Shown here: positions 41,981 through 61,360 of the stretch, in pieces | How the letters are laid out: each line of letters starts with the position of its first letter | Numbering within the stretch: the first letter of the stretch is position 1 | Source of the DNA: Oikopleura dioica | Taxonomy: Eukaryota > Animalia > Chordata | Length of the DNA stretch: 64,000 nucleotides | NCBI GenBank assembly: GCA_907165135.1 | Contig: OU015567.1 | Location: 4,154,001 to 4,218,000, forward strand | Reading direction: 5' to 3' | Program-made: the position numbers and the translations under genes | The notes under the pieces: generated by a model | Told to the model about the DNA's origin: nothing | Database searches by the model: none | What the model saw: only the letters and a program-made list of their open reading frames with translations

Positions 41981-42301
41981 TTTTCATTCTTCGAAAATCT
42001 CTACTTTATTGGTTTTTCTCGGTCATGAAAATTTCTCGTTTCGCTGGAGGAAACGGCGCGCGCTCTAATTGGTCAGCCGCCTGGATGATGGATCGGTCGA
42101 GGAAGAAGATTAATTGAGAATGAAAGATTGAGAAAGTTATTTATTTGATCACAGGTGAAGGGTCAATTCATGCAGACTGTAAACAAAGTTTTTGACAAGA
42201 TAAGAATCTTCTTCATATGTAAAATAGAGAATATTATATCAGCCCAATAATACGGCTTACCGGACGAAATTTCGGTCACTTTTTATTTTAAATAATTTAT
42301 T

Positions 42302-45300
42302 TCAGTAAAGAGGCTTGCAAACGTTCTCGCAATTCCAAGTACAAGTATCAACATCAAAGACGCCAGTTTCAGGGCAAGAATTGTGACAGTTTCTGTCACA
42401 GAAAGTAAGAATTTCGCGGTCTTTGCACATTTTTATTGAGCAAGAATTTCCATCTCGAACCATTGATCCGCCATCGAAATGAAGTCTTTCAAGATATCCA
42501 TTTGTCTCGTGTTCGATGTAGCAACGGGAAGAAAGAACTTAATTTTCAATCATTTTTAGTTTTGATTTTTACGAAACCTGGAATAAAGAGCTCGCCGATG
42601 AGATCCGGATTCTGGTTCTGGCAAAATATTCTTTGAATGAATTCATTCGCTTCATGAATTTTCTTCATCTCGAAGTCCGAGAAGCTGATAGGTCTTTGGC
42701 TGTCGACAAGATTCAGTTGATCCTCATTGTTGAAAATCCAGACTGCGTTCTTCAGTGGAGCTGGGTTTTGGCGGCCATTGTTTGTTGGACTTAAATTTTG
42801 TTGCCTGTTTTTTCGGGATGAAAGATACCTGGAGCTGATCATGATAACCGAGAACTCGTTGTCCTTTCTCTCCATCGCAAAAATCTGGTTGAAAACCATG
42901 TGACTTTGGACAAGACCAGATCTACTCTGCTCTAGAATCACGTTCAAATGCTCCTTGACATCGTTGAAATCCGTGAAAGTCTGGACATAATCGATTGAAA
43001 TTCCTTTTCGAGTCCCCTGGATGATGGAGAGTTTCATCCTCAATCTCAAGGGCATAAGGGCTGTTTTACTGGTTAAAAATTGGATAAAAAATTACGATTT
43101 TTATCAAAGAAAACCAGTTCCTTGATGAGCTTCAGCAAACTCGTAGATGACGTCTTGATAGTACGACCTTGAGGCTTCCTGGATATTGTTCGATATGTCA
43201 ATGTAGAAGTGAACTACAGCATCGTCGATTTCACAGGGTGGTAGGATTGTCTGAGATGAACAAACAGCGCTTGGGACGATAGCGCCTGTCACATGAATGA
43301 TGTCTTCGTGGATTTTAACGACGGCGGAATTGATCTTGTTTCTGTCATCGTCAGCTAAAAATATCTTTGAGAGAAGGTCTTTTAGGACCTCAGATTCTTT
43401 CATTTGAATATTATATAAGAGAGGTATCACTCTTATAAGGCAAAAAAAAAACAGAAAATATTTATTTATTGACAAATTTATGGTTTTTCATATAGTCGTA
43501 AATGTAGACTCTACATGATATAGAAAGCTTACCTGGTAAGCTCATCGTCGCATCTCCATTAAAACCACTGTCGATTTTCTTGACAAAATCAATCAATTCT
43601 TGCGCCTCAAACTCGTCCATTCCGACTGTGATAAGCTGAATCGGGCTTTCTCCCAACGTTCTTGCAGCGCCTCCAGCATGAGAATGGGACACGACCGATG
43701 GAACTTCGCCGACAAAAGCGTAGATTTTTGAGGGAACTTCTAAAGTGAGTTGGTCGGTTTTTACTCGAGCAAGAGCGGTCTTTTCGGGGGCTCAAAATTT
43801 AAGGACCGTAAAATCATTTAATTATTGATGCTTTTATATATTTTAGAACCGATTTTTACGGATGAAAGAAATATTTCCTTAGGTTAAAAATCTTCAGCTC
43901 AAAAATTAGGAGCCCTGTTCTTGAGTGGAAAATTCTGATCATCAAAAGACGAAACCTTGATTTTAACGGATTCCGAGAAGGTCGCATTCAGATTGTTCAT
44001 ATACTCCTCTAGAACTTTCGCATGATCAATATGCTTATCTACCATGACATAAATCACTCCTGCTCCTTCTATCGTCTGCGGCAAATTCGGCATGATGACC
44101 GGCTCAGCTAGTATCGTCTGTTTTTCCCGAAGAACTTGGCAGATGAGGGATGAGACGGTGCATGAAAAATGCTCGATTGATTCGATGTTGAAATGCCAGG
44201 CGCCGGAATCGCGGTAGTCGAAATCCTTGCCTTCGATTTCGATAAAACCAACGAAAACACTTTTATGACGGTTAGTTGTAAAATTAAATTTGAACTTCTC
44301 GTTAATTTTATGTTTTCATTAATGAGATTGAGGAAGAGATGACACCTTCTTCTAAGATTGCGAAGCAATTCGGTGATGTTTTTATCGATGATTTTGATTA
44401 TAGAACTCCCCGATGAAGACATCTTAGTTCCTCGAAAATCGCCTCAACAAACTGCCCGAAAGTTAGTTTTCAAGAACGAGCAGAGAAAAATTGTTGAAGA
44501 AAATCCGGATTTACAATTCCTTCAGAAAAGCTATCAATTCACGAAGAATTTTCAAGTTGAGGTTTTGTTTCTCTCCTTTCTAATTATGTCGGTCCTGCTT
44601 AACTTCTATCTGATCGCTCTCAAAATTATCAAAAAGAAGGTTATCGGGGTAATTAAATTTGTTGACATTTTTTCTTTGAGAAAGACTCACGAAGCAATCG
44701 AAAATAATCTGCTGAAAAGAATCTTAACCTTTCCTGTCACTCATTTTCGCACTTGTCATGAAATCATTAAATCTCGGGCCCGCATCCCAACCATCCTCGA
44801 AGTTGATTGCTTCTGGGAAAATCAAGATGATTTTAGTCTGGTCCTTCATTTCCGCAAGCTTTTCGAATCCTTTTTATTCAAGGCTCAATATCATCTATTA
44901 TTATTTTTTCCAAAGTATAAGGCTTCGAGGGAAGTCTAGAGCGGCTCAAGTAGAGCCTTTCCTGGAATCTCTTTATCATCATCTGCTTCTCTTCGACGCC
45001 TGTAAGCATAATAATCATCAGTAGCTATAAAATCAGTTTGATCATAAGCATCTCCATATGCATCTTGATAGGAGTTTCCATAGTCTCCAAGGGAAACAGG
45101 CTCATTTTCGAATCTTCCCTCCAGGATATCAGCTCTTTTCTGGACGTCGTAAAACAGCTCTCTTGGGATTTCAGAGTAGTTGATTGAAAATCCGGATGCA
45201 AAAAGAGCCGCGACTTCTTGAGGCGTTTGTCGGATGAAAATTACTTTTTCGTTGATGACGAGTGTGAGGGTGACGCCCTCGTTTTTGTGGTCGAGTGCAG

Positions 45301-48300
45301 TTGTGAAAATGATGGTGTTTTGGACAATCTCTTCAAGTTCTTCATCAGTTCGGCGATTGGCATGGATGTAGATAAGGACATTGACGATTTGGGAGTCGGA
45401 TTCGACAATGGTTTTGCAGACAGTTCCGTGCGACTTTGGACGCATGCAGATCGGAGTGTTCAGAACCTTGGTTTCGATTGTTGTTTGAATTGAAACCGGG
45501 GTAGTTGTTCTCGGAGCTGTCGAGGGCGAGTTCGATGTTGTTGCTTCTTCCGGACAAAGATGAGCGGCAAAAGAACAGTGCAGACTTTTTCGCGTTTCAT
45601 GAAATTTCATGATTTCATAATAAAAGTTATGTAATAAAAAATCGGGTCATTGACCCAAAGATTTTCGAGAAAATATTTCATAATGATTATTTAATATCCA
45701 AATTGACGCAGTTCCAGATTCACTGTCCAATATTTTTTCCATGATCTTGTCAAGATAAGTCTATCTGAGCACTCTTACAACCAACAAAGGCTATGGAATT
45801 CTTGACAGCACATGTTTGAGGGACAAACTTCAGTTTGGTACTATAAGCTGCTCGACTCGCGCTCGAAATCAAAGAGAGTTTTGTCAACAGAAAATTATTG
45901 ACCTATTTTGACTTGCGATCATGGCGAAACCGCGTGTTCGATTTTTGGAACATGTGGCCTTCATTTCTGCTCCAGACTATAAGCGAAAAATTAAGGTTTG
46001 TTTCATAAAAAAATGAAAATAATTTATTCCTCAGGTGCCTTGGGACAATTTGACCAACGAAGAAAAATGCATCGCGAAACTAGAACTCAACTTTTTCAAA
46101 GCCACCGAAATGATTGTTCACCCGAAGAGTCAGTCGAATACGTCTATGATCTTCATCGAACCCGCAGTCCTCCAAAAAATGGCGAAATTCAAGAAGAAAT
46201 ACAAGCAAATGATTCAACAACTACCCGTTTCTACTCCATGATTTTTTGCGGTTAAAAATTGGCCAAAAAGATATAAAAGTATAAATTCTTTCTAGAAAGA
46301 ATTTCATACAGTTACTCGACACAGTTAACTGCGAAAGTGTCACTCCCACGTGCTTTTTACGGGCGACTTGGGTCAAACATATTTGCATGTCAATAAAAAT
46401 TTCTAAACATCAAAACGCGTTCCTTTCACTATCCTCTGGCTCAAGAATGATCGCATATTGCTCGATTTCTTCTTTCACATTATCGTTCAAACTTTCATCA
46501 GGAACGAAAATTGCTACAGTAGAATTTTCGTCGACAGATCTTCGTTTTCTATAATAATAATAGTCGTCCGAAGCGTCTTTTCCTGACACATAATCGTCAT
46601 AATCTGGAGTTGGCGCTAGAATCTTTGTTGGATCGACACCTTCAAAGGAAAGAGCCTTCAATTCTTCAACAAGTGTTTTCGCTAATTCGTCGGAAATTGT
46701 CCCGTTGAATACAAGATCTTCGTTGAAATACAGAGCGAGATTTTCAAGCGACAATTCTGTTTTCAATACTGATTGAAGAAGAGCTTCGAGTTTTGCAGAA
46801 TAGTCTGTTGTTTCAAGAACTTCAATGATCAGGGTCATCGACACTGACCCACTTTCCACCGCGCAGGAATCGTATTTGATTTCACATGAATCGAAGAACG
46901 CTGGTGCTTCCGTTGAACTCGTTTTTGAAGTTGTTAAGTCAACAGGATCCATTCCAGAGCTTTCAACATCGTCACCAGAGCTTTGATAGTCTCCAGAGCC
47001 GCTTCCGCTGCCGTCGCCACTCCCACTTCCAGACAGTTCTTGTTCGAACTCCTGGCAGAAAAACTCTTTGATTTTGCATGGGAGGCCGTTCGAGATCTTG
47101 ACTTCCTTTGATCGTGAGTCACTTCCTTGACTGAGAGTCAAGACGTTCGAAGAAACTTTACTGTCTCGTAGACTGTTCATGAATTCCTCAGTTTTGATTT
47201 CCTTGGCTTTGACCAGCAAGGAAAGACCTTTGATGTCTTCCATGACAGTTATTCCGTTGACCTTCATTGTGACTGAATAAAGATTGGACCCATTGTCGTA
47301 CCCTAGAATGGTTGAAACAAGATAGTCAATCTGGCGTTCGAATTTAATGAAGTTTTCCTTGATGTTCCAGATTTCTATCAAAACTGATGTCGCGGAGGCA
47401 TTATCGCAAAAAGCTGAGCCTGATGATTCTGGTGAAATGCATGGGAATCGGTAAAGTGTATAAATAGAAAAAGTTGGGTCGTTGATTTGGAAGAAGTTTG
47501 CGACTGTTGTCGTTGTTGTTTTTCGTGATGGCGCTTTCGGCAGTGTGGTGGTTGATATGTTTGAAGAAGTTGTGTTAGTGGTGCTTTTTCTGCTCGTCGT
47601 GGAAGTGGACGATGTTGTCGAGGTAGTTGTTGTCGAAGTCGTGGTAGTTGTGGTAGATGTAGTTGTAGTCGTTGTCGTACTTGTTGTCGTACTTGTTGTA
47701 GTTGTTGTTGTAGTCGTAGTAGTGGTAGTTTTCGTAGATGTAGTTGTAGTAGTTGTTGTCGTACTTGTTGTTGTCGTTTTTGTAGTTGTAGTAATGGTCA
47801 TTGAGGCTGTTGTTGTAGTGGTTGAAGAAGTGGTGGTTGTCGTTGTTGTAGTTGTTGTGGTAGTTGTAGTTGTAGTCGTAGTCGTAGTTGTAGTTGTAGT
47901 TGTGGTGGTTGTTGTCGATGTGGTCGTCGTTGTCGTTGTCGTTGTCGTGGTGGTTGTCGTCGTAGTAGTTGTAACAATACAAAATTGCGAGAATTCATCA
48001 TCGTCAATAGACAGTATCTTACAAATACTATCAACAGTTGAATCATCAGCAGCGCTTCTCCGTTTTCGTGTGCCATAAAAGTCTGAACCATATGTCGAGT
48101 CATAATTTTCGTTTGAATTGTAAAAGTCCCCATCGTCTGCACTTGTTGCGTAGAAGCCATATGCATCAGATGCAACTTGCACTGTTGGCGACTTCTTGAG
48201 AACAAATCGGTCGAACTCGGATGGAATCTGGTCATTTTCTGAAGCGAGGATGAAATATCTTGGCTCCGGATCTGCCTCGCAAATGAGCTTTTCCAGCTCT

Positions 48301-51300
48301 TTTTCGAGATTATCGAAATTCACGGGGGTTAGTTTCAAAAGTGAGTAATGCTTTCCGAAAGCTTTTTTGAGATCATTTTCCATCGATGAACATAGTTCTG
48401 AAGAGTTTTGATCATAAACAGCCAGGACATAAGAAGACTCATCGATTTCTTGGTGGCACTGAGGATCGGATCGACAAGTTTCATGCATCTGAATCGCGTC
48501 TTTCCATATTGTGGCTTCTTGGTTTATCAAAGCACCAGATGTTTCATAAATAAAACTGTCTTCCAGCACCGTCAAGTCCATGAAATGCTTCAATCCGTTC
48601 AACTGAAGGGTCTTGAAGAATCCGTTTTCTCCTGGATTCTCGATCAAACAACCATCGAGTTCATAATGAGTCCATCCGTTAAGAATGTGATCAGGAGTTG
48701 CTTCAATTTCGCTCGTCAAGTTTTCCAGTCCTTCTCTGTCTGCTAGATACCCAAAAGAAATCAAGACGAGCTGATCTGGCTCAACTTGGCCAAGACGAAG
48801 ATCTTTCGTCGCCAATCGCTTGATCATGTTCTTCGGGAAAGTAAATTTCTCCGGATCGTTCGAGTTCGGTAAGTCTGTATCAAGCCAAACGCCGAAGGAT
48901 TTATAATTGTCCGATGTTATTTGAAGACCGTTTCCAGAGAAAACGAATTCGATCTGGAGATTTGTCTTCATTTTCGAGTGAAGATCTGCCAGAATCGATT
49001 CGAAAGCAAAGTTGAGATCAAGTGTTTCGGGGATGAAAGAAGTCGTCAAGAGATAGAGAATGATCTTCGGCGGGCTGAGCGGAATCGGGGTTGGAATGTT
49101 CGTCGCGATTTGACCCGCTTGTCTGCAGATTTCTTTCCTCACTGGCTCAACGAGATCATCAAGGTCAAAACTGTTCTTTACGTTGTAAACTCGCCCCTTA
49201 GTTTCTTTTACGTATTCGCCGAAATTGTCGATTTCTCGGCTTTTTCCAAAAGTAACTCCGATGATTGGATGATTTCGCATGTCAGGGCTGATCCATGAGT
49301 TGTCACGATTTGAACTCACACGAGACTCATCGTGGATTTCTGAGATCAGGTCGAAAGTTGGGAGAATATTGCGCTTCTGTGTTTCTGAGAGGGTTCCAAA
49401 CAAGATGATGGAGACTTTTTTCGCACCCTGGAAAATGCATTAGTATTTTTGTGCTTGATGTAAGAATATAAAGATATTATCTTAGATATATCAAAATTTG
49501 ACTTTATTAAAATTATTATTTCAAGACGAATCATTTAACGTAGATGACACTTATCAGTTTGTTTCATTTTAGCCATAAAATAAAGTTAGAATTTGATATG
49601 ATAACTCAATCGCAAAAATTCTAAACGGATTTGTTGATTCATTTGTGAAGATATTTTGAAAAAAGTAGCGCGATGTCGATTTTATATCAATCGGAAATGG
49701 TTCATTCCCTTTGATAAAAATCTCAAGACGATAAAATGGTTCGATCAGCAGCTGTTTTGAACCGAACCAAAAAAGGAACTAACCTGACGAGCACCATTTT
49801 TCTGCGAAAAGAACTCATTTTTGTTGAGCAGCGAAAGATCATGCAAGAAAACTCGGTATTCATAAGTTGAGTTTTGAGCGGCAATTTCCTCATCGATTCG
49901 ATCTGAGTTCGTGAAAAATTTTGAGCCTTTGTATTTCCTCAAAAATGCATGTTCGAAACCAGTGTCTCCAAGAGACCCAATCGAAACTGTCATGTGCTTT
50001 TCAGAACTGACAAAGCCATCCAAAATCTTTTCAACGAATTCTTTCTGGTTTTCGATTGTATTTCCCGCTGATTGAAAACCAATAAAAAGGTCGATTTGGG
50101 CGCAACAAATTGGAAGACCTCCAGAACTGTGGTCCTCAGCGATACATTGTTCATCGGGACTGAGGGTTGGGAAAGGTTGAGGGAGAAATGGGACGATTTC
50201 GTCTTCGATCGAGCAGATTCGGCTTGCTGAAAATAAAAATGACCGATTCTTGAAAAAATAGCGGAGACCTACCAATATTTCCAGCAATATACTGAGCATC
50301 ATTTATCTCCCACTCCGGCATGAAAAAGACTCGGTCGGAATGACCCGCCAGTTTGAACAATTTTTCGATGCTTTTCGTCAAATAATCAGAAACACCAATC
50401 GCAACGACAAAAACAACAGGCTCGTCAGAAGTTCCTTCCCAATATACTTGAGTTCGGTCGATTTCCGTTTCGGGTTCGTTTTCTGCGAGATGTTTTATCA
50501 CCACAATTGCTTTGTTTCGGCCAAGGGAGTCTTTGAACCAAGCTTCAGCAGCTTCCGGATAAAAGCCTTCATAAAAATGATAGCCGCGATATTCTTGAGC
50601 TTCGCTTTTGAGTCCATCGATTCGGTCGCAGATTCCTTCTTGCGATTCTGGCTCTGTGAATGGAAATTCTAGTCTCGCATGATCTCTGCTGATCGGTTCA
50701 ACGGAGATTCTAGTGACGGAGGTGTCGAAATGCGAAACGAGAGATTTGGCGAAAAGACGTTGCCATGCATGGTCGACTTTTTGAACTTCGCTTTTTTATA
50801 TTGAGGAAAAAATTTGATGATAAATAAAGAAACTTCAACTTTGGTCGAATACAGTTATTTATTATTCTGAGGGCATAATTGTAATCGGATGCATGATCAA
50901 ATTTCCTCGAAGAGAGATCAGATAAAAAGGTTCATTTTTACAAACTATCTTTCAAAAATTTCAAATGATAGCGTTTCCAGATAGTGTTAATAATTTTGAT
51001 TCATTTGATGAATCTTTTCTCGAAGAAAAATATCCGCAAAAATGACCAGTTTTTTGATTTTTATATCTAACGGCAGCTGTTTTACCTGATGCTAATTGCA
51101 GATAAAGTGCTAAGAGGTACGTTAACTTAATCAGATATCAGCTGATCATAATCCCAATACAAAAAATCAAATTATGTCAATATTTCCTGAAAGCATCGAG
51201 AGCGATAACAATATCAGTTTGCATCGAACACGTTCCATTTGTAAAGCAAGGTACCTCAAAATCAAATTCATCTTCACCTTCCAAATCCACCGTTCTTCCT

Positions 51301-54300
51301 TCTTTCACTGTTTCTCCTCCGGTTTCTTTGCAGATTTCCGCAAAAACAGGGCTGAGGAAGTTTTGCAAGTCGGTGAACTTCTTTGTATTGTGGACGAGCT
51401 CGGGTGAGCTGGCGATTTCAAGAAGCTCGGAGTCCACTGCTTTGTTCACTCCAACAGCGACAACGGCCAAGTCTCCTGCTTGACGAAGATTTTCGCCGAC
51501 GATTTTCACCGCATTTTCACCGAGGTCTTTGGATCTTCCGTCAGTGACCACGATCATGATTTTTCTTTGAGGAGTTTTTCTAGATTAAAAAAGAGAAAAT
51601 CATAAGGAGATAAAAATTAAGAGATAAGAGATGATTTGTCCTCTTATTTTTGCGAAGATTAATTTATAATAAATCTAACAAGGTACTCGACGTCAAATCC
51701 GCCAATTTTTCAATTCAAATCACGAATAGGGTTAACTCTTCCTGACATTTTCCCTTGCTCCTCTTTCCGGGGAAAACTCCTTCTCCGCAGCATATTTCAT
51801 CGCCGTTCCCGTCAAAGTTGAGAAACCAGAGTGATACTTGATATTCGACAGAACCTTCATGAACTCTGTTATCTCTCGCTGTCCCTCTTTATCATCAAAT
51901 CTAATGACTGGCTCGACAACATCGGAATATTGCAGAAGGCCGTAGTTCATGTCGCCTCCATGCTCGAAATTGATCTTGACGAATCGCTGGACGAATTCGA
52001 TGATGCTTTCCCAGCCGGCTCGTTTTGTTGAATAACTTCCATCTTAAAGTTTTGACTAATATTTTACTGGACCTTGAACCCTTTTCGGTGGGCAATGCAG
52101 GACAACCATTTGAAAATTATGTTTATTCGGTAAAAATACATTTTGATAATTTATAAAAACTTAGATGAAAAATGACATTTATGGTTCTTTGAATATTTCT
52201 TCCTCACCAAGAACAAAGAAAATATCCGCTGATGGATGCTCAACTGAGCATTCTCCAACTTGATCATGAATATCGTTAATATCCACGGGCGGTTCGACGA
52301 CCTTTTCTTCCACCGAGAGGCAAATGTCTTCAATAATTTTGTCGACGATATCTTGCTCCAAAAGCGATTCAGAATCATCAAACTGGTAAATGTCGCCGTA
52401 GGGATCCATTTTGTTCGCCTTCTCATATTGCGCTTTTTCGCCAAGTTGGACGGAAATATAGCTGATTTTCTTGCGTAAAAACGTTTCATGGACTTTTGCA
52501 AGGGAAGATTTTGGAAAGTTCTTTTCCGCCTTAGAAATGACCTGAATAAGAACTCTATCAGCGTTCTTTGCTTTGAAAAATGCGGAGATTTTCATCGCTG
52601 AGCTCCACGGCTTTGCGCTCGCCCAAGAAACTGACGGGGGAGGAACGCGGAGTTTCAGGAATTTTTTGACGATATGGACTTTTGGAAGCTTTGAATTCGC
52701 AAGGAATCCCATTGGACCTTGAGGAAGAGGGACCAGCTTGCCATTTTTGCCGTAAAAGACCACACCGACGGCTTTCAAATGTTAAAAATTGTTTTATCAC
52801 TTCACATTGAATTCTCAATTTAAAACCCTTAAAAACTATTTCAAAGTCCGGTTAATTCAATTCAGTTGAGTTGCCCTAATTTCGAAGGAAACGTTACCGA
52901 TAAAGTTCTACCCTTACACGTTGGAAAATTAATTTTCCAATGGAAATCTTAGATTTTTGCATAATTTATCCACTATTTCTATTAGAATTTATCGTTGCTC
53001 GTCCCCAAGACTCGCTGATATTCCGTATCAATCCTGTTTCTTTCCCAATTTATTCAGTTCAATCCTTTTGAATGCTCCCGCCCGTGCCCGCTTTGCCACT
53101 CAACGCTGCCCAAAATTGTGTTTCTTCCACTTTTCTTTCGCTCTCTACTGCCGCCCACTGGGCCGTTTTTCCTGCGATTTTCATTTTTTCTAGTGTAAAA
53201 ATGTTCATGTTTTCATCTGCGAAATTTCTGTTGCCGTATCTTGTCCGCGTCTTAGGTTATTTAGAGGTTTTGTAGGGTTTGATCATTTTGCTATCATAGT
53301 TAGGTCCGGTTTGATGCTCTTTAGACACCCTTAATATCAATCGATTTTAATAATTCTTTTTTTGTTCAAGAGTTTAATATCTAGACTTGTATCGCTGAAA
53401 GTTTAAAATGAATCGAACATACAGAACGGTCAGAAATCGCCTGTAAAAGAGCGCAAGAAACACATAAAGCGCGGAGCGCGCGAGCAAAATCGCTCGGCGC
53501 TGGGGTTGTCTCCCTCCCGTCATGTCGCGGCGCATTTATACCACGCGCGCTGCGCAGCGGGCTCACTTCAGTTTTTCAACAAAAAACTCGAATTTTACAG
53601 TTTTTTCACCGACAACTAACCAACTCCAACAACATGCCAGCTGCCAAAGCCGCAACCAAGAAAGCCGCCCCATCCCACCCACCATACAAGCAGATGATTG
53701 CTGAAACCCTCAAGGGTCAAGGTAAGAAAGAGAAACATTAGAAAAAAAAGAGATTTTAAAAAGTAAAAGCTACAAGCGGCTTTTTTTCAAGAATTTTGAA
53801 AGCAAAATTAATTCTATTTTTAGGCCGAAAGGGACTCTCCTTCATCGCCATCTCCAAGATGATCCAGGCCAACCAGAAGGGACTCGGTCCCCGACACGAA
53901 ACTTCCCTCAAATTGGCCCTCAAGCGAGGCATTGAGGACAAATCCCTCGCCAAAGTCAAGGGTGTCGGTCTCGCCGGTTCTTTCAAGCTCGCTGCTCCTG
54001 TCAAGCCCGCTCCTGCCGCCACGAAGGCCGCTCCCAAGGCCAAGCCTGCCGCCAAAAAACCCGCCGCGAAGAAGGCTGCAAAGAAGCCCGCTGCTAAAAA
54101 GTCTCCCACCAAAAAAGCTGCCGCCAAGAAGCCAGCCAAGAAGGTGACCGTCAAGAAGACCGCGGCCAAAAAACCAGCAGCCAAGAAAGCCGCGAAAAAG
54201 CCAGCTAAGAAGACCGGCAAGAAGTAAAGTACTTCTTCTAGAAAAAAAAAAAACAAAACGAATTCGCGACCTCAGGAAACGAAATAGTCTCGAAACGACT

Positions 54301-57300
54301 CTTTTCTCAACTGCCTTGAATACCCCTTGTTCTACTCTGTTCATAATATAAATTGCGCAAAAACACATTTTAATAATAATAACAATAAAAATTTACAAAA
54401 TCAAAATCCCCTTGATTCACTATTATTTTTCGCAAGGCATTTAAAATTTAAACATTTCCTGGTGCATTTTTTGAAGAGGAAATTCTCAACCTTTCGATAA
54501 TTTTTCTCGCAAAAGCCAAAAATCTTTTTGGCCCCTTTCTGTCAAGCTTGTAGCTGAAGTAAGACATGTCGAGGGCGATGAGGATCTCAAGCGGACGATC
54601 CAGTCCGGAACATCCACAGTTCTCTTCATCGAACGAGTTTCTTTCACCGGGTGCAGCTGGGCAGTCGTTACGATTGTCGCACACTTTGACGGGGCTGACG
54701 CAGGTGATTCCGTCTGCGCATGTGAATTTGTTGCTCGCCTCGCATTCGCCTAAATGGTGAGCTGCGCGAGGGGCGATCGTTGTCGTTAGCTTTTCTGCTT
54801 CAGTTGTCGTTGTTGTTGAAGTGGTAGAGGTCGTTGTCGTCGAAGCTGTTGAGAAAAAGAGCGGCATGTCCATTCCCGATCGACCTTGTTTCCTGCGCCG
54901 AGATGTTGTTGTACTCGAGGTTGTGGTTCTTGTCGTTGTTGTTGAAATCGTGGTGGTTGTTGTTTTAAGCGTGGTTGTGGTTATTTTCTCCGATAGCGTC
55001 GCTAGAGCGTCTTCATCTGGAATAGACTGAGTCGAAATCTGCTGAGTTGACAGACTTGCCAAAGTGACCTCTGTTGACGTCGATGCTGTCGATGGCAACA
55101 TTGTCGATGTCACCGGTTCAGTCGACTTTGCAAGTTTGATCCGCTCAATCGTCCGGCAGAGCTGACTTCCTTCTTGGAACAGGATCTTGCCAGCCATTTG
55201 GCTTCTTGAGCGAGACTCAAAGTATTCTAAATAATTTCCAGTTGATGTTGCTTTTTCTCGGACAAAATCATAATCGCTCGGTCCGATCACTTCAACAATG
55301 TCCGCGTCTTTCAGAACAAAGTTTCGAACATTTTGGAACCAGTCGGGATTGCTAGAAAAGAGGATGATTTGCCGAGTGTAGTCATCTTCGTTTCTCGGTT
55401 TTCGGAAAACATCGCGAAGGACGTAATAAAGGCGGCCTCGGAATCGATTGAATTCGTGGGGATAAAACCATGCTTTGACGAGTTCGTCGAAATGCTTGTT
55501 TGAAACGGGATTCGTAACTCCATTGAACTCTCCAAACATTCGATAAGCCAAGTTTGTTTGATGATCGAAGACTGCTACGCTTGGTCTTGCCAAGCCATCT
55601 TCAATGAGCTGCGAGTTAGAGAAGCCTTTGAGGAAGTTTGCTGCGATTTCAACGGGTTCATCATTATTAAAAATATCGACATCAAAGAGAAAGATGGTCT
55701 TGGTCGGCTTTCGGCAAATGAGAGGGTTGAGCGTTGTCGTAACTCGCTGAGTCTTGTAGCGTCGAAAGTAGGGATCTTCTGTAGTTGTTGTCTCTGGGGT
55801 TTTATGCTCGAAAAGTTTCACAGCAATTTCATCAGCAAGAGCGGCGCATTCATCTTCGCTCTTGTAATTTGCGTCTTCGAAGATATCCATGATAGAAATG
55901 AGAGGCAGTTTATCGGTGTAAAATCCGGGTGGAACTTTGAATGTTAAAACAGGGCCAAGGTCTTTGAAGGTAAACATTCTCTTCCGCTCCTCATTATGGA
56001 CCTGAATGCTGAAGAAATCATCGTAGCTCAGTTTCCACTTTCGCTCGTCGATATTTTCGTAGAGGAATCGCTCGACTTCTTCTGCTTTGAAGACTGTTCG
56101 AGAAATGTATGAGCCCTCGTGGAAGAGATAAATTCGGATTCCTTCGTTTTCGTCGGAATAATCTGCAATATTTCCGAGGAAGGCTTCTTGACAGTCAAAC
56201 AGTCGACGATTTCTTTCCAGGGTGAGATCTGGTCGCTCGATAATGAACATTGGTTGTTTTGGTAGGTAAAAAGGCATGCTTCGTCTTGTTGTTGTAGTCG
56301 TAGTTGTCGTGGTTGTCGTGGTTGTCGTTGTTGTAGTGGTCGTGGTCGTTGAAGTCGTTGTAGTAGTGGTTGTTGATGTTGTAGATGTTGTTGTACTTGC
56401 TGTTGAAGTTGTTGTGGTTTCAGGGCAAAGGTTTTGCTTGAAAACATCAAAATCAACGGTCTCCCCCTTCATCAAAAGTGCCATGGCAAAAGCAATAGAT
56501 TCTTTTGACTCTTTGATTTCACTTAGGTCTTTGAACGTCAAGATGATAGTTTTGTCTCGCAAAGCATATTCAGTAGAACTTGAACAGTCTGAAGCTCCTA
56601 TTTCGATAAATATAGCTGGATAGCCGATGTCGTCTACCCAAAGCTCGTCAATGATTTTTTGAGATTGCCCAGGAGAAGTCAGAGCTACAATGATCTTCTT
56701 TGCGTGGCCGAATACTTTGACTTTATGGTCAAGAGATAACGAAGTACTTCTTCTTTGCCGCGAATTTCGAGGAACGAGGATAAAATACTCATCATTGAAT
56801 GAAGGATCGTTGCTCGCAAGCGCTTTAAGTTTTCCGCCGATATTGCTATTTGTCAATTGGTCTTCATTGTTTTGTGTAAAAGTTTGAAGTCTGTCTTTGA
56901 AATCCTCTTCTGCGAAAATCTGAAGACCGTTATTTGTCACAAGTGTGCCTGTGGTTGAGAATGGAATCGAGTCGGTGGCTAGCTCAAACAAATCAGAGAA
57001 TAAATCTTGATTTTCTTGTGATGGGGTTTCAATAAGGAACAAAAATGCTCCTGATTTGGATAGGATTGTAGTTGTTCTTGTTGTGGTTGTCGTTGTCTTC
57101 GTAGTAATCTTAGTAGTAGTAGTAGTGGTAGTCGTGGTTTTAGTTGTCGTAGTCGTAGTCGTAGTCGTAGTCGTAGTCGTAGTCGTAGTAGAAGTTGTCG
57201 TTGTCGTAGTCGTAGTCGTAGTCGTAGTCGTAGTCGTAGTCGTAGTCGCAGTCGTAGTCGTAGTCGTAGTCGTAGTAGAAGTTGTCGTTGTCGTAGTCGT

Positions 57301-60300
57301 AGTAGTAGTAATAGTTGTCGTAGTCGTAGTCGTAGTCGTAGTCGTAGTCGTAGTCGCAGTCGTAGTCGTAGTCGTAGTCGTAGTCGTAGTAGAAGTTGTC
57401 GTAGTCGTAGTCGTAGTCGTAGTCGTAGTCGTAGTAATAGTTGTCGTAGTCTTAGTCGTAGTCGTAGTAGAAGTTGTCATAATCGTAGTCGTAGTCGTAG
57501 TCGTAGTAATAGTTGTCGTAGTCGTAGTCGTAGTCGTAGTAGAAGTTGTCGTAGTCGTAGTCGTAGTCGTAGTCGTAGTCGTAGTCGTAGTCGTAGTCGT
57601 AGTAATAGTTGTCGTAGTCGTAGTCGTAGTCGTAGTAGAAGTTGTCGTTGTAGTTGTGCTTGTGGTGGTGGTTGAGGTGGTGGTGGTAGTTGTCGTTGTT
57701 GTCATTGTGGTAGTTGTGGTAGTAGTTGAAGTTTTTGTAATTTGGTCAGTTTGTGCTGTCGTAGGGTACATTGTAAATTCAGAGTCGTCAAGTTGTGTTG
57801 TGACGGAACTAAAAATGATTTCTTGCGATGTAGAGAGTAAGACATCCTCTGTGGAAGAAAGTTCTGGAAGACCTTCAGTAACGAACATATTCTCAGTTGC
57901 AGCTCTACATTGAGCCATTAGCTTGTCTAGCTCGCTGAAATCTTCCAAATCCGGTAGTTCGAAATATGAACAATCCGCACTTCCTCCAGTCGAAGTGGTC
58001 ATTATCGATGTCATTTCCGTCGTATGGACAAAATCACCACAATAATCACGATGAACGCAGCGTTTTTCCTCTTCGCTCCAGAGAAAGTCCTCTTCTTCGC
58101 AATGCGGATAGCACCCTTCCACACAAAGGGTTTCATAAGGAGACGGAAAAGGATTTTCACAAGACGGAAGGGAGTTACCGCAGCACTCATAGTGAAAGAC
58201 ACAATCGTAGTGATGCTCGTCATAAGCCTCACACATCATCGGACAAAGCCTCTCATCTCGCCAAATGTGACAGATCTCCTCTTCAATCATCATCGCATTT
58301 GAGCATTTCTGTCCGTACGCTGACAAGACATCACAGAAATCAGGGCAAGTAAGGATATAAGACGCTTTGCAATTGCAAACAGCAGCTACACACTCGTCGA
58401 GATAGTCTTCATAATCAACGTAGGCATGGCAAGATTCAAATCGATCGCCGCCAAGGATTCTCTGGCACAAGGATCGGCCCTTATCATAACAAGTTGGCTC
58501 TAGATTTCGTTTTCTGCGGATGAGATTTTCTGAACTGAGACTTGAATAGCCAACATCCGACGAGCACATGCCGTGAGTAACATGATCTTTGGCCTTTTTG
58601 ATAATAACTGTGTTCCCTTCATCGAAAAGAATCTCAAAATCTTTCGCAAAAGATACCTTCTTGTATCGACCAATACGATCTGTGACCTGGTTTTTGATTG
58701 GAATTCCGTCAAGCTCAAATTCTTCATTTTCCGATAGTCTCATCGGAGTTGTATCAAATGAGATGAGTTCTAGATTTTTCATGCCTCGTATCGACTGCTT
58801 TCTTCCATCAAAGCCAGTTATGAAGTTGTTTTTGATAATGCGGCACTCGACAAAAAGTTTTTCTTCCTCCGAACATGACCATTTTTGATTCTCGCAATAA
58901 CAAGTCTGAATCGTATTTCCGAAGTCTGAAGTAATTTGCGTCGAAGAATTTGTCGGGAACGATCTCCCGCGGGAGAAACAACCACATTCTGACGATGGGA
59001 TGCACTGTTCAGCATCGAGAGAGTAATGATGGCCTTCTTGGCACTTGCAATCAAGATCAGAAAGCTTTCGATTATAGAAGAGATCTTCGCATGTGACCAA
59101 ATCATCTCGAGAAGCAGGAAGCATCATTTTTTGACATTCATCGCTTTTTGGCTCATTCGGAACGCAGAAGATCTCACCCTCGAGACACTCGCATTTGTGG
59201 TCGTTGATCATGTGATGCTGCCCCGGCGCCATGATATTTCCTTGATGATAGCATGAACAGTCAGAAATCGAGGGAACACATGTTTTGTTCAAGTCCATAA
59301 ATGAATCTTCAAGACAAAAACACGCTTCAATGTTCTTCAATCCGACTTGCAAGGAAGGGCAGCTGAACAAATCCGCGTTTTCAACAGATCGAAATGACAT
59401 GCCGAATGGGCACGAAACCAAACAATTTGTTCTCTCTCGCCAGGAAGAAGAAATATCGAAATTTTCTCTGCATCGAACCACAATCTCTTCTATGATTTCA
59501 CAATGATCGTCTGTCAAAGAGCATTTCATAAGCAAGTCATCAGCTTCTACGCATCCATTTAGCTCGAAAGATTCAATAAATTCCAGGCATTTGTCCGTTC
59601 GGCTTGGCAAACCAACGTATTCTCTGGGCTCGAACTTGACAATTTTCCCAATTCGCCAGAGATGTTGAAGATTTTGATGAGTAAAATCAAAGCCGACAGC
59701 CTCTTTCGAATCATTGCAAAGGCCTTGGACTTCAAGCTTGTTTGGGAATCTTAATTCAAGTTTTTTCCGCGTTATTTCAATCTTGAATTTATTCTCGAGC
59801 TCTAGAATTGCTTTCATCCCATCAGCCCAGAACTTGAGATTTTTATGAATTCCCGTTGTCAGTAGAGGAGCATGGTTGACACTGACAAGGCCGGGTTGAA
59901 CTTCGATTGTGTCGTTTTTGCTTTTTATTCGAAGATTTTGGGGGCAAAGGAAGCTATCGCACTCTTCGAATTCTGCTGAAATCTGAAAGTCATGATTTTT
60001 CGCCAGCAAGAAAGCTCCCGTGTATGTCAGATGAAATGATCTTTCATGGAATTGTTTCAAACCGCCAGCTTTGGCGAATGAGCACGTCAAATCGCAAGGA
60101 AGCTCGCTGCAATTCCAGGCTCCATCTTCGCAAATGCATTTTGAGCAGTCGTTCTGGCGAAAATCTCCTGGTTGAAAAATTCTCCCGAAGTAGTCACAGT
60201 TACATTCAGATTGCTTGACGCATTTGTTCAGGCTTTTATCAAGAACAGACCCGGGTGGGCACGAACAATGCTCGGAAATTCTAGAGCAGTCGCCTTTCTT

Positions 60301-61360
60301 TTCCCCAGAGCATGTTTGAAAGCAATCTTGGGAGAGATCCAATTCGAAGGAATCTTCGCATTCTCTTACACACTCCCCTGGTTCATTCGCGATTTCGACT
60401 GCATTTCCGCTCGCTTGGCAATCTTCAAGAAAATCCTCTCGAACAAGGCAGCTCCAATCGTCATCCGAGGAATATTGGCAGAGTTCTTCGTAGTCTTCGA
60501 CTTTGAGTTTCAGCCGACAATCTTTAAGACTCTTCGCTCGAAGAAACGATTCGCAAAGCTGATTTTCTTCTGCGAGATTGCTTCTGCTGCTGATGCTTTT
60601 TGACCAATGCTGAAAAATTGCATCATTGTTTTGGGAAAAACTCGGCGGGTTACAAAGACCGACTCGTTTTTGCCGAGAAATTTCTTCGAGCTTGACCGAA
60701 TTTCCGTCAAATATGATCCTGATATTTTCGTTATAGATGACCAAATAGCCGGGCATGATGTAATGATGAAAATGCTTCATTTCCGCGATTTCTGTGTCGA
60801 TTTTGAGGTCTTCCTTGATTTCAAATATTTGATTTTCGTAAATTCGCAGGATATTTTCTCCGTTATGGAAAGTTATTTTGAAGTCGACATCATCAAGAAT
60901 CGTGATTTCAGCAGATTTACTCGGGTAATCCAGCTTATTCCCAGAAAAGCTCTTCAAAAAATTCCTCGTCACATGACAAGTTCTTCCTTGATCATGGGAA
61001 AGGTGGCAGAATTTTCCGGAATATCCATTTTTACAGATGCACTTTCCACTCTCCGAACAGTCGCCATGAAGACAAGGAAAATCGCACGCTCGCAGATCGC
61101 ATATTTCACCTTTCCAGCCAGAATGACAGATGCATGTGTCGAGGGAGGGATCAAGGCCTCCGTTGTAGCATTCTTTTCGGACTTGTTCACTCGTAGTGCA
61201 ATTTGGCCCAGAAAAACCAAGGGGACAATGGCATTTTCCATCGATCAGTTTGCCACTCCCGCAGACAGAGTCGTCCGGACAGACGGAGCTCGCTAGAGCA
61301 AGTAAAGCTTAATTCAAATAAGAAGATAAATAAGAATTAAAACGAACCTAAACGCCTCAT
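42302..61360 (-). CDS. Giant secreted gel-forming-mucin/VWA chimera (~4,800 aa; oikosin/house-matrix candidate)
   Basis: ATG at 61360 (MRRLALLALASS), a 40-nt intron, then a 6.8-kb exon 61307-54459. That exon carries EGF repeats, VWD/C8/TIL assemblies (including a MUC2-D3-like WRDERLCPMMCEAY..FHYECCG..EGCYPHC), poly-Thr tracts, an LDLa repeat and the start of a VWA. In-phase exons 52771-52208, 52042-51742, 51564-51187, 50790-50273, 50226-49784, 49427-46423, 45584-44962, 44869-44734 and 44259- onward complete successive VWA domains across junctions (e.g. DIFFVL|DGSYS, GARENVR|KIMIVVTDG, LDAFS|EVQ). The last 3-4 junctions and the stop near 42302 are less certain. Confidence 0.8.
44339..44939 (+). 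CDS. Possible third nested antisense gene, unknown product
   Basis: ATG 44339, a possible 31-nt GT-AG intron, then the open frame of ORF 44358-44939 (ELPDEDILVPRKSPQQ..). It lies mostly in host intron 44733-44260. No known motif. Confidence 0.25.
45921..46241 (+). CDS. PHACTR C-terminal PP1-binding-domain microprotein (93 aa), nested antisense
   Basis: Exon 45921-45995, a 39-nt GT-AG intron, exon 46035-46241: MAKPRVRFLEHVAFISAPDYKRKIKVPWDNLTNEEKCIAKLELNFFKATEMIVHP. This matches the PHACTR pattern RF..V.V..A.DY.R....PW..LT..K.....ELN.FK..EM.VH. Confidence 0.8.
47480..47975 (-). repeat. Poly-Thr mucin (PTS) tract, ACN codon repeat
   Basis: Long Thr-rich run inside ORF 46410-49403. Confidence 0.9.
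53535..53572 (+). promoter_or_regulatory. Candidate H1 core promoter (TATA-like box plus TCAGT initiator)
   Basis: TTTATA at 53535-53540 lies ~30 nt before TCAGT at 53568-53572, in a GC-rich patch ~65 nt upstream of the H1 ATG. Confidence 0.45.
53634..54227 (+). CDS. H1: Linker histone H1, intron-containing, nested antisense in the giant gene
   Basis: Exon 53634-53721 (MPAAKAATKKAAPSHPPYKQMIAETLK), a 102-nt GT-AG intron, exon 53824-54227 (G.S..AI.K..KLALKRG..KGVGLAGSFKL plus a K/A/P tail). No canonical 3' histone stem-loop seen. Confidence 0.95.
57060..57740 (-). repeat. Poly-Thr mucin tract encoded by (ACTACG)n
   Basis: Plus strand (gtcgta)n over ~500 bp, giving over 200 mostly Thr residues in ORF 54448-60972. 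Confidence 0.95.

What the first reader, a model, noticed from the sequence alone, without database searches (positions are those of the whole stretch)
42302..61360. Single ~4,800-aa protein joining a MUC2-like D-assembly/PTS front end to a long VWA array
The ORF track shows many separate ORFs, but the exon phases and split VWA motifs join them into one gene. Order: signal peptide, EGF x3-4, VWD/C8/TIL units, poly-Thr, degenerate VWAs, LDLa, then about ten VWA-like domains with further Thr tracts. Gel-forming mucins have D assemblies plus PTS, and vWF has D assemblies plus three VWA domains. This protein has both, and I see no C-terminal cystine knot. It is a candidate scaffold of the larvacean house or mucus filter.
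Basis: partly seen in the sequence, partly recalled or inferred. Interest (0 to 1): 0.75.

Follow-up and report, generated by a model that had tools for sequence, protein, structure and literature searches.

The report
Giant mucin-like secreted protein gene
This stretch of the Oikopleura dioica genome most likely encodes one very large (about 4,900 amino acids) secreted, sugar-coated, mucus-type protein whose front end matches gut mucin and von Willebrand factor, but only one of the claimed ten or so "VWA" domains is clear-cut, and where the animal uses the protein is unknown.

Summary
The minus-strand gene is real. It starts at ATG 61360 and stops at TGA 42304-42302, with AATAAA directly after. 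It has at least 14 exons and about 14.65 kb of coding sequence (about 4,880 aa).

Confirmed parts:
- signal peptide and three EGF-like repeats
- a D1-D2-D'D3 head colinear with MUC2 (BLASTP 4e-53) and scoring equally against VWF structures (8e-39)
- a 244-aa poly-Thr tract plus four shorter ones
- an LDLa-like module
- one canonical VWA with an intact metal-binding motif
- no cystine knot

Not confirmed: "about ten VWA-like domains". Three neighbouring units are weakly VWA-like, and two 3' exon fragments match the profile faintly. The other modules (X1-X3, G2-G4, H) show no detectable relatives. G4 and H are related to each other and end in a conserved Tyr/Asp-rich run followed by RKRR.

Continuity from 61360 to 46423 is well supported. 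One 2,283-codon exon covers the front, VWA domains are split by introns, and the public Norwegian protein CBY39058.1 makes the same five joins. The last ~2.6 kb is joined by inference only.

A paralogous locus on contig C4 encodes EGF/D units and, about 6 kb downstream on the same strand, VWA/PTS; whether they form one gene is unchecked.

House versus endostyle-mucus use is untestable here. I rate it a new variant of the mucin/VWF kind, of moderate interest.

The parts
61348..61360 (-). Exon 1: ATG and the first 4 codons of the signal peptide (MRRL; the peptide continues ALLALASS after the intron)
   Evidence: Sequence reading. Junction coordinates. Phase check.
54459..61307 (-). Exon 2, 6,849 nt, stop-free. 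It carries EGFx3, D1-D2-D'D3, PTS1, X1, PTS2, X2/X3, PTS3, the LDLa-like module and the start of VWA-like unit 1.
60994..61284 (-). Three EGF-like repeats (one complete 6-Cys repeat, two atypical)
   Evidence: Pfam EGF, EGF_2 and EGF_Teneurin, 3 stretches each above cut-off.
60094..60987 (-). D1 assembly: short, degenerate VWD1, then C8-1, TIL-1 and E-1
   Evidence: Colinear BLASTP with MUC2 from C8-1 onward. VWF-like/VWC Pfam hit at aa 371-412. VWD1 scores only 2.2 bits, with 7/300 shuffles as good.
59104..60096 (-). D2 assembly (VWD2-C8-TIL-E)
   Evidence: VWD2 scores 33 bits full-length against a 449-domain VWD profile, 0/300 shuffles as good. Colinear with MUC2 D2.
57904..59103 (-). D'D3 assembly (TIL'/E', shortened VWD3, C8-3, TIL-3/E-3). 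The equivalents of MUC2 Cys1088 and Cys1130 are kept.
   Evidence: Pfam C8 6e-11. PDB MUC2 D3 3.5e-17 and VWF D'D3 1.5e-14, with residue alignment. Residue roles from PMC7599080.
57043..57774 (-). PTS1: 244 aa, almost pure Thr
56443..57042 (-). Orphan module X1 (200 aa, contains RQRR)
   Evidence: No Pfam hit. Not above shuffles against the VWA profile.
55135..56250 (-). Orphan modules X2 and X3, preceded by PTS2 (56251-56442)
   Evidence: No Pfam hit. X2-X3 pairwise z 4.4 and X3-H z 4.1. X3 against the VWA profile: 9/300.
54766..55134 (-). PTS3 (interrupted Thr/Ser tract)
54616..54744 (-). LDLa-like 6-Cys module
   Evidence: Pfam Ldl_recept_a E 2e-4, 22.0 bits, just under the 24.1 cut-off. 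The CDxxxDC...DE..C pattern is read directly.
52230..54612 (-). VWA-like unit 1 (no metal-binding motif), split by the 1,687-nt GA-AG intron 54458-52772
   Evidence: The join ...SSSKNAP|AVG... is also made in the public Norwegian protein P0125 = CBY39058.1. VWA-profile score exceeded by 1/300 shuffles.
51321..52229 (-). Canonical VWA (unit 2) with a DGSYS...T...D metal-binding motif, split over three exons (52771-52208, 52042-51742, 51564-51187)
   Evidence: Pfam VWA 3e-15 and 2e-10 on the exons. 1.9e-35 full-length in P0125. PDB collagen VI alpha3, PTMP1, integrin I and VWF A domains.
50273..51216 (-). VWA-like unit 3 (degenerate), split by the GA-AG intron 51186-50791
   Evidence: Pfam VWA E 0.014. 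13 bits, 0/300 shuffles as good. Join confirmed in P0125.
49110..50108 (-). VWA-like unit 4 (degenerate), split by intron 49783-49428. It follows the 46-nt GT-AG intron 50272-50227.
   Evidence: N-terminal part 0/300 and C-terminal part 3/300 shuffles. C-terminal helix motif shared with VWA 2 (BLASTP 1e-3). Join GARQ|GAKK also in P0125.
46423..49427 (-). Exon 8, 3,005 nt. It carries the end of unit 4, orphan module G2 (48000-49079, RKRR at 48057-48068), PTS4 (47496-47999), and orphan modules G3 (47040-47495) and G4 (46423-47039, RKRR at 46539-46550).
   Evidence: For aa 1-505 (end of unit 4 plus G2), only Oikopleura or metagenome fragments match among 1.84e9 proteins. For G2: no paralogue in the own genome. 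No Pfam, PDB or Atlas match.
44962..45584 (-). Exon 9: short PTS plus module H, a homologue of G4 ending in a Tyr/Asp-rich run and RRRR (44990-45001)
   Evidence: G4-H pairwise z 6.8. YY.YR.RR invariant in G4, H and Norwegian G4. Codon-usage LLR +0.22 per codon. The join across the GA-AG intron 46422-45585 is inferred only.
44734..44869 (-). Exon 10
   Evidence: Phase-compatible AG|GAA...AAAAAG| intron. LLR +0.24.
43780..44733 (-). Unresolved exon-intron structure. The ORF I core (~44297-43956) is coding.
   Evidence: 17,387 phase-compatible exon chains. ORF I LLR +0.17.
42578..43779 (-). Three exons (43779-43515, 43429-43115, 43060-42578) joined by short GT-AG introns. Pieces J and K give weak VWA-profile matches.
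   Evidence: Phase check. J 1/300 and K 1/300 shuffles. LLR positive in the open frames.
42302..42537 (-). Last exon: C-terminal 8-Cys tail (no known family), then stop TGA 42304-42302
   Evidence: No Pfam hit at E<=10.
42296..42301 (-). AATAAA poly(A) signal directly after the stop codon

Best explanation
This is one gene of Oikopleura dioica (Okinawa lineage) encoding a secreted glycoprotein of about 4,880 aa in the gel-forming-mucin / von Willebrand factor superfamily. Shown: the reading frames, the exon phases, the domain content and the homology of the head. Inferred from homology, in order: (1) The signal peptide sends the protein into the secretory pathway. (2) The EGFx3 + D1-D2-D'D3 head assembles head-to-head in the acidic late Golgi and is locked by D3-D3 disulfides. 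The counterparts of MUC2 Cys1088, Cys1130, His1128 and His1133 are present. (3) Five Thr-rich tracts (244, 64, ~120, 168 and ~30 aa) are densely O-glycosylated and give a stiff, hydrated bottle-brush. (4) One metal-binding-competent VWA binds a matrix partner in a cation-dependent way. Three degenerate VWA-like units and the orphan alpha/beta modules act as spacers or contact surfaces. (5) The conserved 'Tyr/Asp-rich run + RKRR' motifs after G2, G4 and H are proprotein-convertase sites, probably next to sulphated tyrosines, so the secreted product is cut into large fragments. (6) There is no D4/VWC/cystine-knot tail, so tail-to-tail dimerisation of the MUC2/VWF type cannot occur. Any second linkage must come from the 8-Cys C-terminal tail or from non-covalent or oxidative cross-links. 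The material made is an extracellular gel or matrix. Whether that is the house (oikoplastic epithelium) or the pharyngeal/endostyle or gut mucus is not resolved.
For: Gene limits and phases. Continuity of the first 12 kb: a single 2,283-codon exon running from the signal-peptide region to the first strand of VWA-like unit 1; VWA units split by introns; five joins reproduced in the independent public protein CBY39058.1 (P0125). Head homology: BLASTP against marmoset MUC2 4e-53 over 1,027 columns, colinear D1 to D3; PDB phmmer gives VWF D1-D3 7.8e-39, MUC2 4.8e-38, MUC5B 2e-32; 235 mucin/VWF hits, best 2e-30. D3 interface residues: alignment read against PMC7599080. PTS tracts and dibasic sites. 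RKRRS invariant between Okinawa and Norway in a region that is 60% identical overall; YY.YR.RR invariant in G4, H and Norwegian G4. Canonical VWA. The 3' exons code in the predicted frames with the same codon usage. G4-H homology, z 6.8. A paralogous locus with EGF/D and VWA/PTS open frames in the same order and on the same strand.
Against: No transcript evidence was available. The join 46423 -> 45584 and everything 3' of it rest on phase-compatible splice sites, module homology and codon usage only. Region 44733-43780 has thousands of possible exon chains. VWD1 and VWD3 are degenerate, and no VWD in this gene reached E <= 0.001 against Pfam's VWD model in the genome-wide scan. One cysteine of the C-x-C-x-C cluster in D3 is replaced by Asp, and there is an extra Cys in 'ECCGN', so the disulfide map may differ. 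Cleavage, sulphation, glycosylation and polymerisation are all inferences. Both AlphaFold runs gave pLDDT 36-37, so no fold is established for the orphan modules.
Confidence: 0.7

Rival explanations
1. There are two or more genes. The ORFs 3' of 46423 (H to the 8-Cys tail, about 850 aa) form a separate downstream gene, for example an operon member receiving a trans-spliced leader, and the first gene ends at the in-frame stop at 46412-46410.
For: The stop-free frame of exon 8 does end at a TGA a few codons after the proposed donor. The 838-nt gap holds an antisense ORF and one AATAAA at 46028. The public Norwegian model ends at the same place. No transcript data were available.
Against: Exon H has no start codon with a hydrophobic signal sequence, and no minus-strand ORF in the gap supplies one. 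A phase-2 AG|GAA...AAAAAG| intron of the same unusual type as four junctions confirmed by P0125 links the frames exactly. H is a homologue of G4, and the [Cys pair - module - Tyr/Asp run - RKRR - acidic linker] series simply continues. The Norwegian model sits on a 10.5-kb contig and is truncated at its 5' end, so its 3' end is not informative.
Confidence: 0.15
2. It is a structural house protein (an unlisted oikosin) secreted by the oikoplastic epithelium.
For: Known oikosins include VWD proteins (oik30a-e), a VWA protein (oik35), and EGF and LDLa modules, and many lack relatives outside larvaceans (PMC3390340). The orphan modules diverge fast (57-61% identity between Okinawa and Norway). A secreted multicopper oxidase is transcribed divergently about 1 kb upstream.
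Against: The 90% cluster of the Norwegian orthologue holds no entry named oikosin. No paper in the library cites CBY39058 or E4YUB9. No expression data were available.
Confidence: 0.35
3. It is a mucus protein of the endostyle/pharyngeal filter or gut, not of the house.
For: The head is of the MUC2/MUC5 type. [quoted passage not shown]
Against: The preprint gives no gene identifier. The genome has at least 10 other VWD loci and a paralogue with better-conserved VWD that fit 'VWF-like' at least as well.
Confidence: 0.35
4. It is a decaying or non-functional gene, since several domains are degenerate.
For: VWD1, VWD3 and three VWA-like units fall below Pfam thresholds.
Against: Stop-free frames of 2,283 and 1,001 codons occur in 40% GC DNA, where other frames rarely exceed 200 codons. 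An orthologue is conserved in the Norwegian lineage, with invariant motifs. Codon usage is coherent across exons.
Confidence: 0.03

Closest known systems
Vertebrate gel-forming mucins (MUC2, MUC5AC, MUC5B)
   Same: The D1-D2-D'D3 head is colinear (23% identity, E 4e-53). PTS tracts follow directly after D3. The D3 dimer-interface Cys and His residues are kept.
   Different: It has three EGF repeats before D1. It has no CysD, no D4, no VWC and no cystine knot. VWD1 and VWD3 are shortened. It carries VWA and orphan modules and RKRR sites in the body.
von Willebrand factor
   Same: D1-D2-D'D3 scores as well as against MUC2 in PDB searches (7.8e-39). VWA domain(s) lie downstream in the same chain.
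   Different: There is no furin site at the D2/D' boundary. PTS and orphan modules lie between D3 and the VWA units. Only one VWA is canonical, and it is nearer to collagen VI, PTMP1 and integrin I domains than to VWF A domains. There is no D4/C/CK tail.
Collagen VI alpha3/alpha6 and mussel PTMP1 (VWA arrays of extracellular matrices)
   Same: These are the best sequence matches of the VWA region. Tandem VWA-type units occur in a structural matrix protein.
   Different: There is no collagen triple helix. Only one unit here is a confident VWA.
CBY39058.1 / E4YUB9_OIKDI, 'VWFA domain-containing protein' (O. dioica, Norway)
   Same: It is the orthologue of window 54500-46423 (57-61% identity) and makes the same exon joins.
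   Different: It is truncated at its 5' end, sits on a 10.5-kb contig and stops where exon 8 ends here. It lacks the head and the 3' exons, and it skips about 100 aa of exon 7 that stay open in this genome.
Paralogous locus G000:C4:8,477,800-8,495,900 (+)
   Same: Signal peptide, EGF and C8/TIL/VWD open frames come first. About 6 kb further on the same strand there is a degenerate VWA, a canonical VWA (36% identical), PTS and SRKRRS.
   Different: Its VWD passes Pfam. Its body is rich in acidic Glu/Pro/Val repeats. Whether its two halves are one gene was not checked.
Oikosins 30a-e (VWD, alpha-tectorin-like) and 35 (VWA)
   Same: They are larvacean extracellular proteins built from the same domain families.
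   Different: No sequence link could be made. Membership of the house proteome is untested.

Membership tests
Gel-forming mucin | N-terminal D1-D2-D'D3 (three VWD-C8-TIL units) | tested here: met
   Colinear alignment with MUC2 D1-D3, E 4e-53. PDB hits. VWD2 33 bits. VWD1 and VWD3 are degenerate.
Gel-forming mucin | Large central Pro/Thr/Ser domain | tested here: met
   244-aa Thr tract after D3 plus four more tracts.
Gel-forming mucin | CysD domains within the PTS region | tested here: not met
   No PF13330 hit in any piece.
Gel-forming mucin | C-terminal D4 / VWC / cystine-knot dimerisation region | tested here: not met
   No VWD, VWC or Cys_knot hit in any exon 3' of D3. The tail is an unclassified 8-Cys segment.
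Gel-forming mucin | Cysteines forming the D3-D3 intermolecular disulfides (MUC2 Cys1088, Cys1130) | tested here: met
   Both positions hold Cys in the HMMER alignment, with roles taken from PMC7599080. The neighbouring Cys1090 position is Asp.
von Willebrand factor | Furin site at the D2/D' boundary releasing a D1-D2 propeptide | tested here: not met
   R-x-K/R-R motifs in exon 2 lie at aa 212, 931, 1517 and 1699, none at the D2/D' boundary (~aa 735).
von Willebrand factor | Three canonical A domains directly after D3 | tested here: not met
   About 1,050 aa of PTS, orphan modules and LDLa intervene. Only one VWA is canonical.
von Willebrand factor | D4, C1-C6 and CK domains | tested here: not met
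VWA domain (PF00092), unit 2 | Full-length profile match and DxSxS...T...D metal-binding motif | tested here: met
   1.9e-35 over profile positions 1-171 in P0125. DGSYS, STLTG and TDG read in the exon translations.
VWA domain, units 1, 3, 4 and fragments J, K | Significant profile match | tested here: inconclusive
   Pfam gives only 0.014 for unit 3. With the custom profile, 0-3 of 300 shuffles reach the observed scores (2.9-13 bits).
VWA domain, modules X1, X2, G2, G3, G4, H, I, L | Any profile, structure or embedding match | tested here: not met
   Not above shuffles. No Pfam hit. PDB and Atlas searches of G2, and an Atlas search of H, found nothing. AlphaFold models of exon 8 and of G4 were unusable.
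LDL-receptor class A | Profile match above cut-off; six Cys with an acidic cluster | tested here: inconclusive
   22.0 bits against a cut-off of 24.1. Six Cys and the CD...DC...DE..C pattern are present, with a 5-residue insertion.
Oikosin (house protein) | Detected in the house proteome or expressed in the oikoplastic epithelium | not testable with these tools
   No named oikosin in the orthologue's cluster. No paper cites the accession.

The most novel reading that the evidence does not exclude
A tunicate lineage keeps, in two paralogues, a polymerising D1-D2-D'D3 mucin head fused to VWA domains in one chain. That would be either a relic of the mucin-to-VWF transition before vertebrates or an independent re-invention of it. 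In this reading the body of the protein is built from a larvacean-only module family ending in a sulpho-Tyr/Asp run and a convertase site, which is cut and perhaps oxidatively cross-linked by the neighbouring secreted multicopper oxidase during matrix assembly.
Probability: 0.12. Interest if true: 0.7.

Novelty: new variant of a known kind. Interest (0 to 1): 0.42.

Why it matters
Gel-forming mucins and VWF share one assembly head but differ in what follows it, and how VWF acquired its A domains is unknown. A chordate outside the vertebrates with a mucin head, PTS and a functional-looking VWA in one chain, and no cystine-knot tail, is a natural test of which parts are needed for polymer formation. 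For larvacean biology it adds a very large, probably heavily glycosylated candidate component of the house or feeding mucus. Such a protein could have escaped the published house proteome. It also defines a conserved 'Tyr/Asp run + RKRR' motif that can be tested for cleavage and sulphation. Still, domain shuffling in Oikopleura matrix genes is well known, and part of the gene is already in public databases as an unnamed protein, so the surprise is moderate.

Tried and rejected
- AlphaFold2 of exon 8 (with the Norwegian orthologue and fragments) and of module G4 (with H and the orthologue) gave mean pLDDT 37 and 36. Only a beta/alpha alternation could be read.
- An ESM Atlas search of G2 gave a best score of 0.79 (a CHAT/VWA cluster), below the useful range. 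The search of H gave nothing.
- A PDB profile search of G2 found nothing.
- BLASTP among exon translations gave one weak hit only.
- The third homologous-protein search found nothing, probably because its words came from the poorly conserved first 500 residues. It says little.
- No Oikopleura protein of 1,257-4,000 aa matches the head, so no public model of the 5' half was found.
- A metagenome scan with module H found no relative.
- Dynamic-programming exon search: the best-scoring chain filled the 46.4-45.6 kb gap with six short extra exons, and 17,387 chains fit 44733-43780. I left that stretch unresolved.
- AATAAA counts in introns are at chance level and decide nothing.
- A SEA-domain reading of G3, G4 and H is suggested only by secondary-structure order. 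Pfam gives no support, so it remains a lead.
- I did not map the published oikosin probe primers, because the lineages are too divergent.
All searches were exon by exon by reference, or used the public orthologue P0125.

Full report
WHAT IS THERE

The window comes from a 64.3-Mb, 19-contig assembly. Earlier notes of this scan name the organism as Oikopleura dioica, Okinawa lineage. In agreement, the only close relative in 1.84 billion proteins sits in a 90% cluster with a Norwegian O. dioica entry.

On the minus strand, stop-free frames of 2,286 and 1,009 codons stand out against other frames that rarely exceed 200 codons. The ATG at 61360 gives MRRL. A 40-nt GT-AG intron then leads into ...ALLALASSVCP, a short signal peptide. 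The last exon ends at TGA 42304-42302 with AATAAA immediately after, and the next minus-strand gene begins about 300 bp further on.

EXON MODEL

Every search was done exon by exon by reference, or with the public orthologue.

Junctions were located by context and checked for phase and stops. The exons are:
- 61360-61348
- 61307-54459
- 52771-52208
- 52042-51742
- 51564-51187
- 50790-50273
- 50226-49784
- 49427-46423
- 45584-44962
- 44869-44734
- an unresolved stretch, 44733-43780
- 43779-43515
- 43429-43115
- 43060-42578
- 42537-42302

The sum is 12,830 + about 523 + 1,299 nt, or about 14.65 kb and about 4,880 aa. Seven of the 13 listed gaps begin with GA, and nearly all of those follow the pattern AG|GAA...AAAG|.

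IS IT ONE GENE?

For 61360-46423 the case is strong.
- (i) The signal-peptide region, EGFs, D assemblies, three Thr tracts, LDLa and the first strand of VWA-like unit 1 all lie in one exon.
- (ii) VWA units 1, 2, 3 and 4 are each cut by introns, so neither side of a cut could fold alone.
- (iii) The public protein CBY39058.1/E4YUB9 (P0125, 1,721 aa, on a 10.5-kb contig, truncated at its 5' end) independently makes the joins ...SKNAP|AVG......FFVL|DGSYS......NVR|KIMIVV......LDAF|S... and ...GARQ|GAKK.... The first of these crosses the 1,687-nt intron that holds a plus-strand linker-histone gene.

For the last ~2.6 kb the evidence is indirect.
- A phase-exact GA-AG intron of the same type links 46423 to 45584.
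- Exon H has no start codon or signal sequence of its own.
- H is a homologue of G4 (pairwise z 6.8), with YY.YR.RR invariant.
- All 3' exons score positive for the codon usage of the 5' exons in their open frame, while other frames and introns score negative.
- The final three introns are short GT-AG introns in consistent phase.

I put a single gene at about 0.8. The exon chain in 44733-43780 cannot be fixed without transcripts.

THE HEAD

Pfam finds three EGF-like repeats, C8-3 (6e-11) and a VWC/VWF-like E module, but no VWD.

The region nevertheless aligns colinearly with MUC2 D1-D2-D'D3 over 1,027 columns (E 4e-53, 23% identity). It matches solved VWF, MUC2, MUC5B and MUC5AC heads at 8e-39 to 4e-32. 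It also draws 235 mucin/VWF proteins from the large database (best 2e-30).

Against a VWD profile that I built from 449 domains of those hits:
- VWD2 scores 33 bits full-length.
- VWD3 scores 7 bits (1/300 shuffles as good) in two colinear pieces.
- VWD1 scores 2 bits (7/300).

So D2 is intact and D1 and D3 carry shortened VWD modules. The genome has at least 60 Pfam-level VWD matches at about 10 other loci and none in this gene, so this gene holds the most diverged D assemblies in the animal.

In D3, the HMMER alignment was read against Javitt et al. 2020 (PMC7599080). Cys is present at the positions of MUC2 Cys1088 and Cys1130 (the two intermolecular disulfides), and His at His1128 and His1133. 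The Cys1090 position is Asp, and there is an extra Cys in 'ECCGN'. No R-x-K/R-R site lies at the D2/D' boundary.

THE BODY

Thr-rich tracts lie at aa 1179-1422, 1623-1686 and 2059-2181 of exon 2, at aa 481-648 of exon 8, and there is a short one in exon 9. An LDLa-like 6-Cys module scores just under Pfam's cut-off.

One VWA is canonical. Pfam gives 3e-15 and 2e-10 on its exons and 1.9e-35 full-length in the orthologue. The DGSYS...T...D metal-binding motif is present. The best solved relatives are collagen VI alpha3, mussel PTMP1, integrin I domains, and only then VWF A domains.

I built a VWA profile from 56 collagen VI/VWF domains and scored each candidate module against 300 shuffles of itself.
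- Weak support: unit 1 (1/300), unit 3 (0/300, 13 bits), unit 4 N-terminal part (0/300), unit 4 C-terminal part (3/300), exon pieces J and K (1/300 each), and X3 (9/300).
- No support: X1, X2, G2, G3, G4, H, I and L.

Aa 1-505 of exon 8 (the end of unit 4 plus G2) find only four hits in 1.84 billion proteins, all Oikopleura or marine-metagenome fragments. G2 has no paralogue in the own genome.

G3, G4 and H are about 90-110 aa long, with a predicted beta-alpha-beta-beta-alpha order in low-confidence models. That is too small for a VWA. A SEA-like sandwich is only a lead.

After G2, G4 and H comes a Tyr/Asp-rich run followed by RKRR or RRRR. The RKRRS motif is invariant between the Okinawa and Norwegian lineages, although the surrounding sequence is only about 60% identical.

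The C-terminal exon has eight Cys and matches no family. There is no D4, VWC or cystine knot.

The claim of 'about ten VWA-like domains' is therefore not borne out. The count is one sure VWA, three probable, at most two more possible, and the rest are modules of unknown fold.

HOW IT PROBABLY WORKS (inference from the families)

The protein is secreted. The heads pair in a pH- and Ca-dependent way and are locked by D3-D3 disulfides. The Thr tracts are O-glycosylated. The one competent VWA binds a partner through a cation. Convertases cut at the RKRR sites, and nearby tyrosines are likely sulphated.

Without a cystine knot, the MUC2/VWF way of making long polymers (tail dimers plus head links) is not available. 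Either the product is a head-linked dimer carrying large glycosylated arms, or the 8-Cys tail or other contacts supply the second valency.

WHERE IT ACTS

This is unknown. Known house proteins include VWD (oik30a-e), VWA (oik35), EGF and LDLa modules (PMC3390340). However, nothing links this gene to that list.

A 2026 preprint reports a 'von Willebrand factor-like gene' strongly expressed in endostyle cells, but gives no identifier. Lang et al. 2016 counted 17 multi-VWD proteins in O. dioica, some with PTS (PMC4948705), so the gene was probably catalogued but not described.

I give house and feeding/gut mucus equal weight.

CONTEXT

A paralogous locus on contig C4 (8,477,800-8,495,900, plus strand) encodes a signal peptide, EGF, C8/TIL/VWD frames (22% identity to aa 12-450 here, E 2e-13). 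About 6 kb further on the same strand it encodes a degenerate VWA, a canonical VWA (36% identical), PTS and SRKRRS. If the two halves are one gene, the architecture is a small family and not a one-off.

A secreted multicopper oxidase is transcribed divergently from about 62326.

VERDICT

This is a real, very large mosaic gene of the mucin/VWF superfamily with an unusual body and no cystine-knot tail. I rate it a new variant of a known kind, with interest about 0.4.

No sequence taken for human was met.

Noticed in passing
window 53640-54240 (+), inside intron 54458-52772: A two-exon linker-histone H1 gene lies on the opposite strand, nested in the 1,687-nt GA-AG intron of the mucin-like gene (Pfam Linker_histone 5e-13).
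   Followed up: partly
window 62326-64000 (+): A secreted multicopper oxidase (laccase-like) gene is transcribed divergently, about 1 kb upstream of the ATG. It has a signal peptide, HWHG and WWHSH copper motifs, and Pfam Cu-oxidase_3 5e-27.
   Followed up: partly
window introns 54458-52772, 51741-51565, 51186-50791, 46422-45585, 44961-44870; also the donor at 44733: Seven of the 13 listed gaps begin with GA. The five listed here and the gap opening at 44733 (donor only fixed) have the form AG|GAA...AAAG|. Four of the donors and acceptors are corroborated by the public Norwegian protein. The two longest host opposite-strand genes. I did not test the claimed end-to-end base pairing.
   Followed up: partly
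G000:C4:8,477,800-8,495,900 (+) = L002, L003: A paralogous locus: signal peptide, EGF and C8/TIL/VWD open frames, then a 1,597-aa open frame with a degenerate VWA, a canonical VWA, PTS, long acidic Glu/Pro/Val-rich repeats and SRKRRS. Whether it is one gene was not checked.
   Followed up: partly
P0125 (CBY39058.1) residues ~617-625 against window 50226-49990: The public Norwegian model jumps from ...YIASNI to VSLGALGD..., skipping about 100 aa (first strand and helix of VWA-like unit 4). These stay open in this genome behind a canonical 46-nt GT-AG intron. This is a likely annotation error or an alternative splice.
   Followed up: no
window 45921-46241 (+), inside intron 46422-45585: An opposite-strand ORF was flagged by another reader as a PHACTR-like microprotein. 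Pfam gave no hit for the overlapping 85-aa frame 45998-46252.
   Followed up: partly
G000:C2:12,013,000-12,027,000 (-) and C4:7,142,700-7,156,600 (+): Other giant multi-VWD open frames (5,529 and 4,257 codons without a stop) exist in the same genome. They are candidates for SCO-spondin or mucin-like genes.
   Followed up: no
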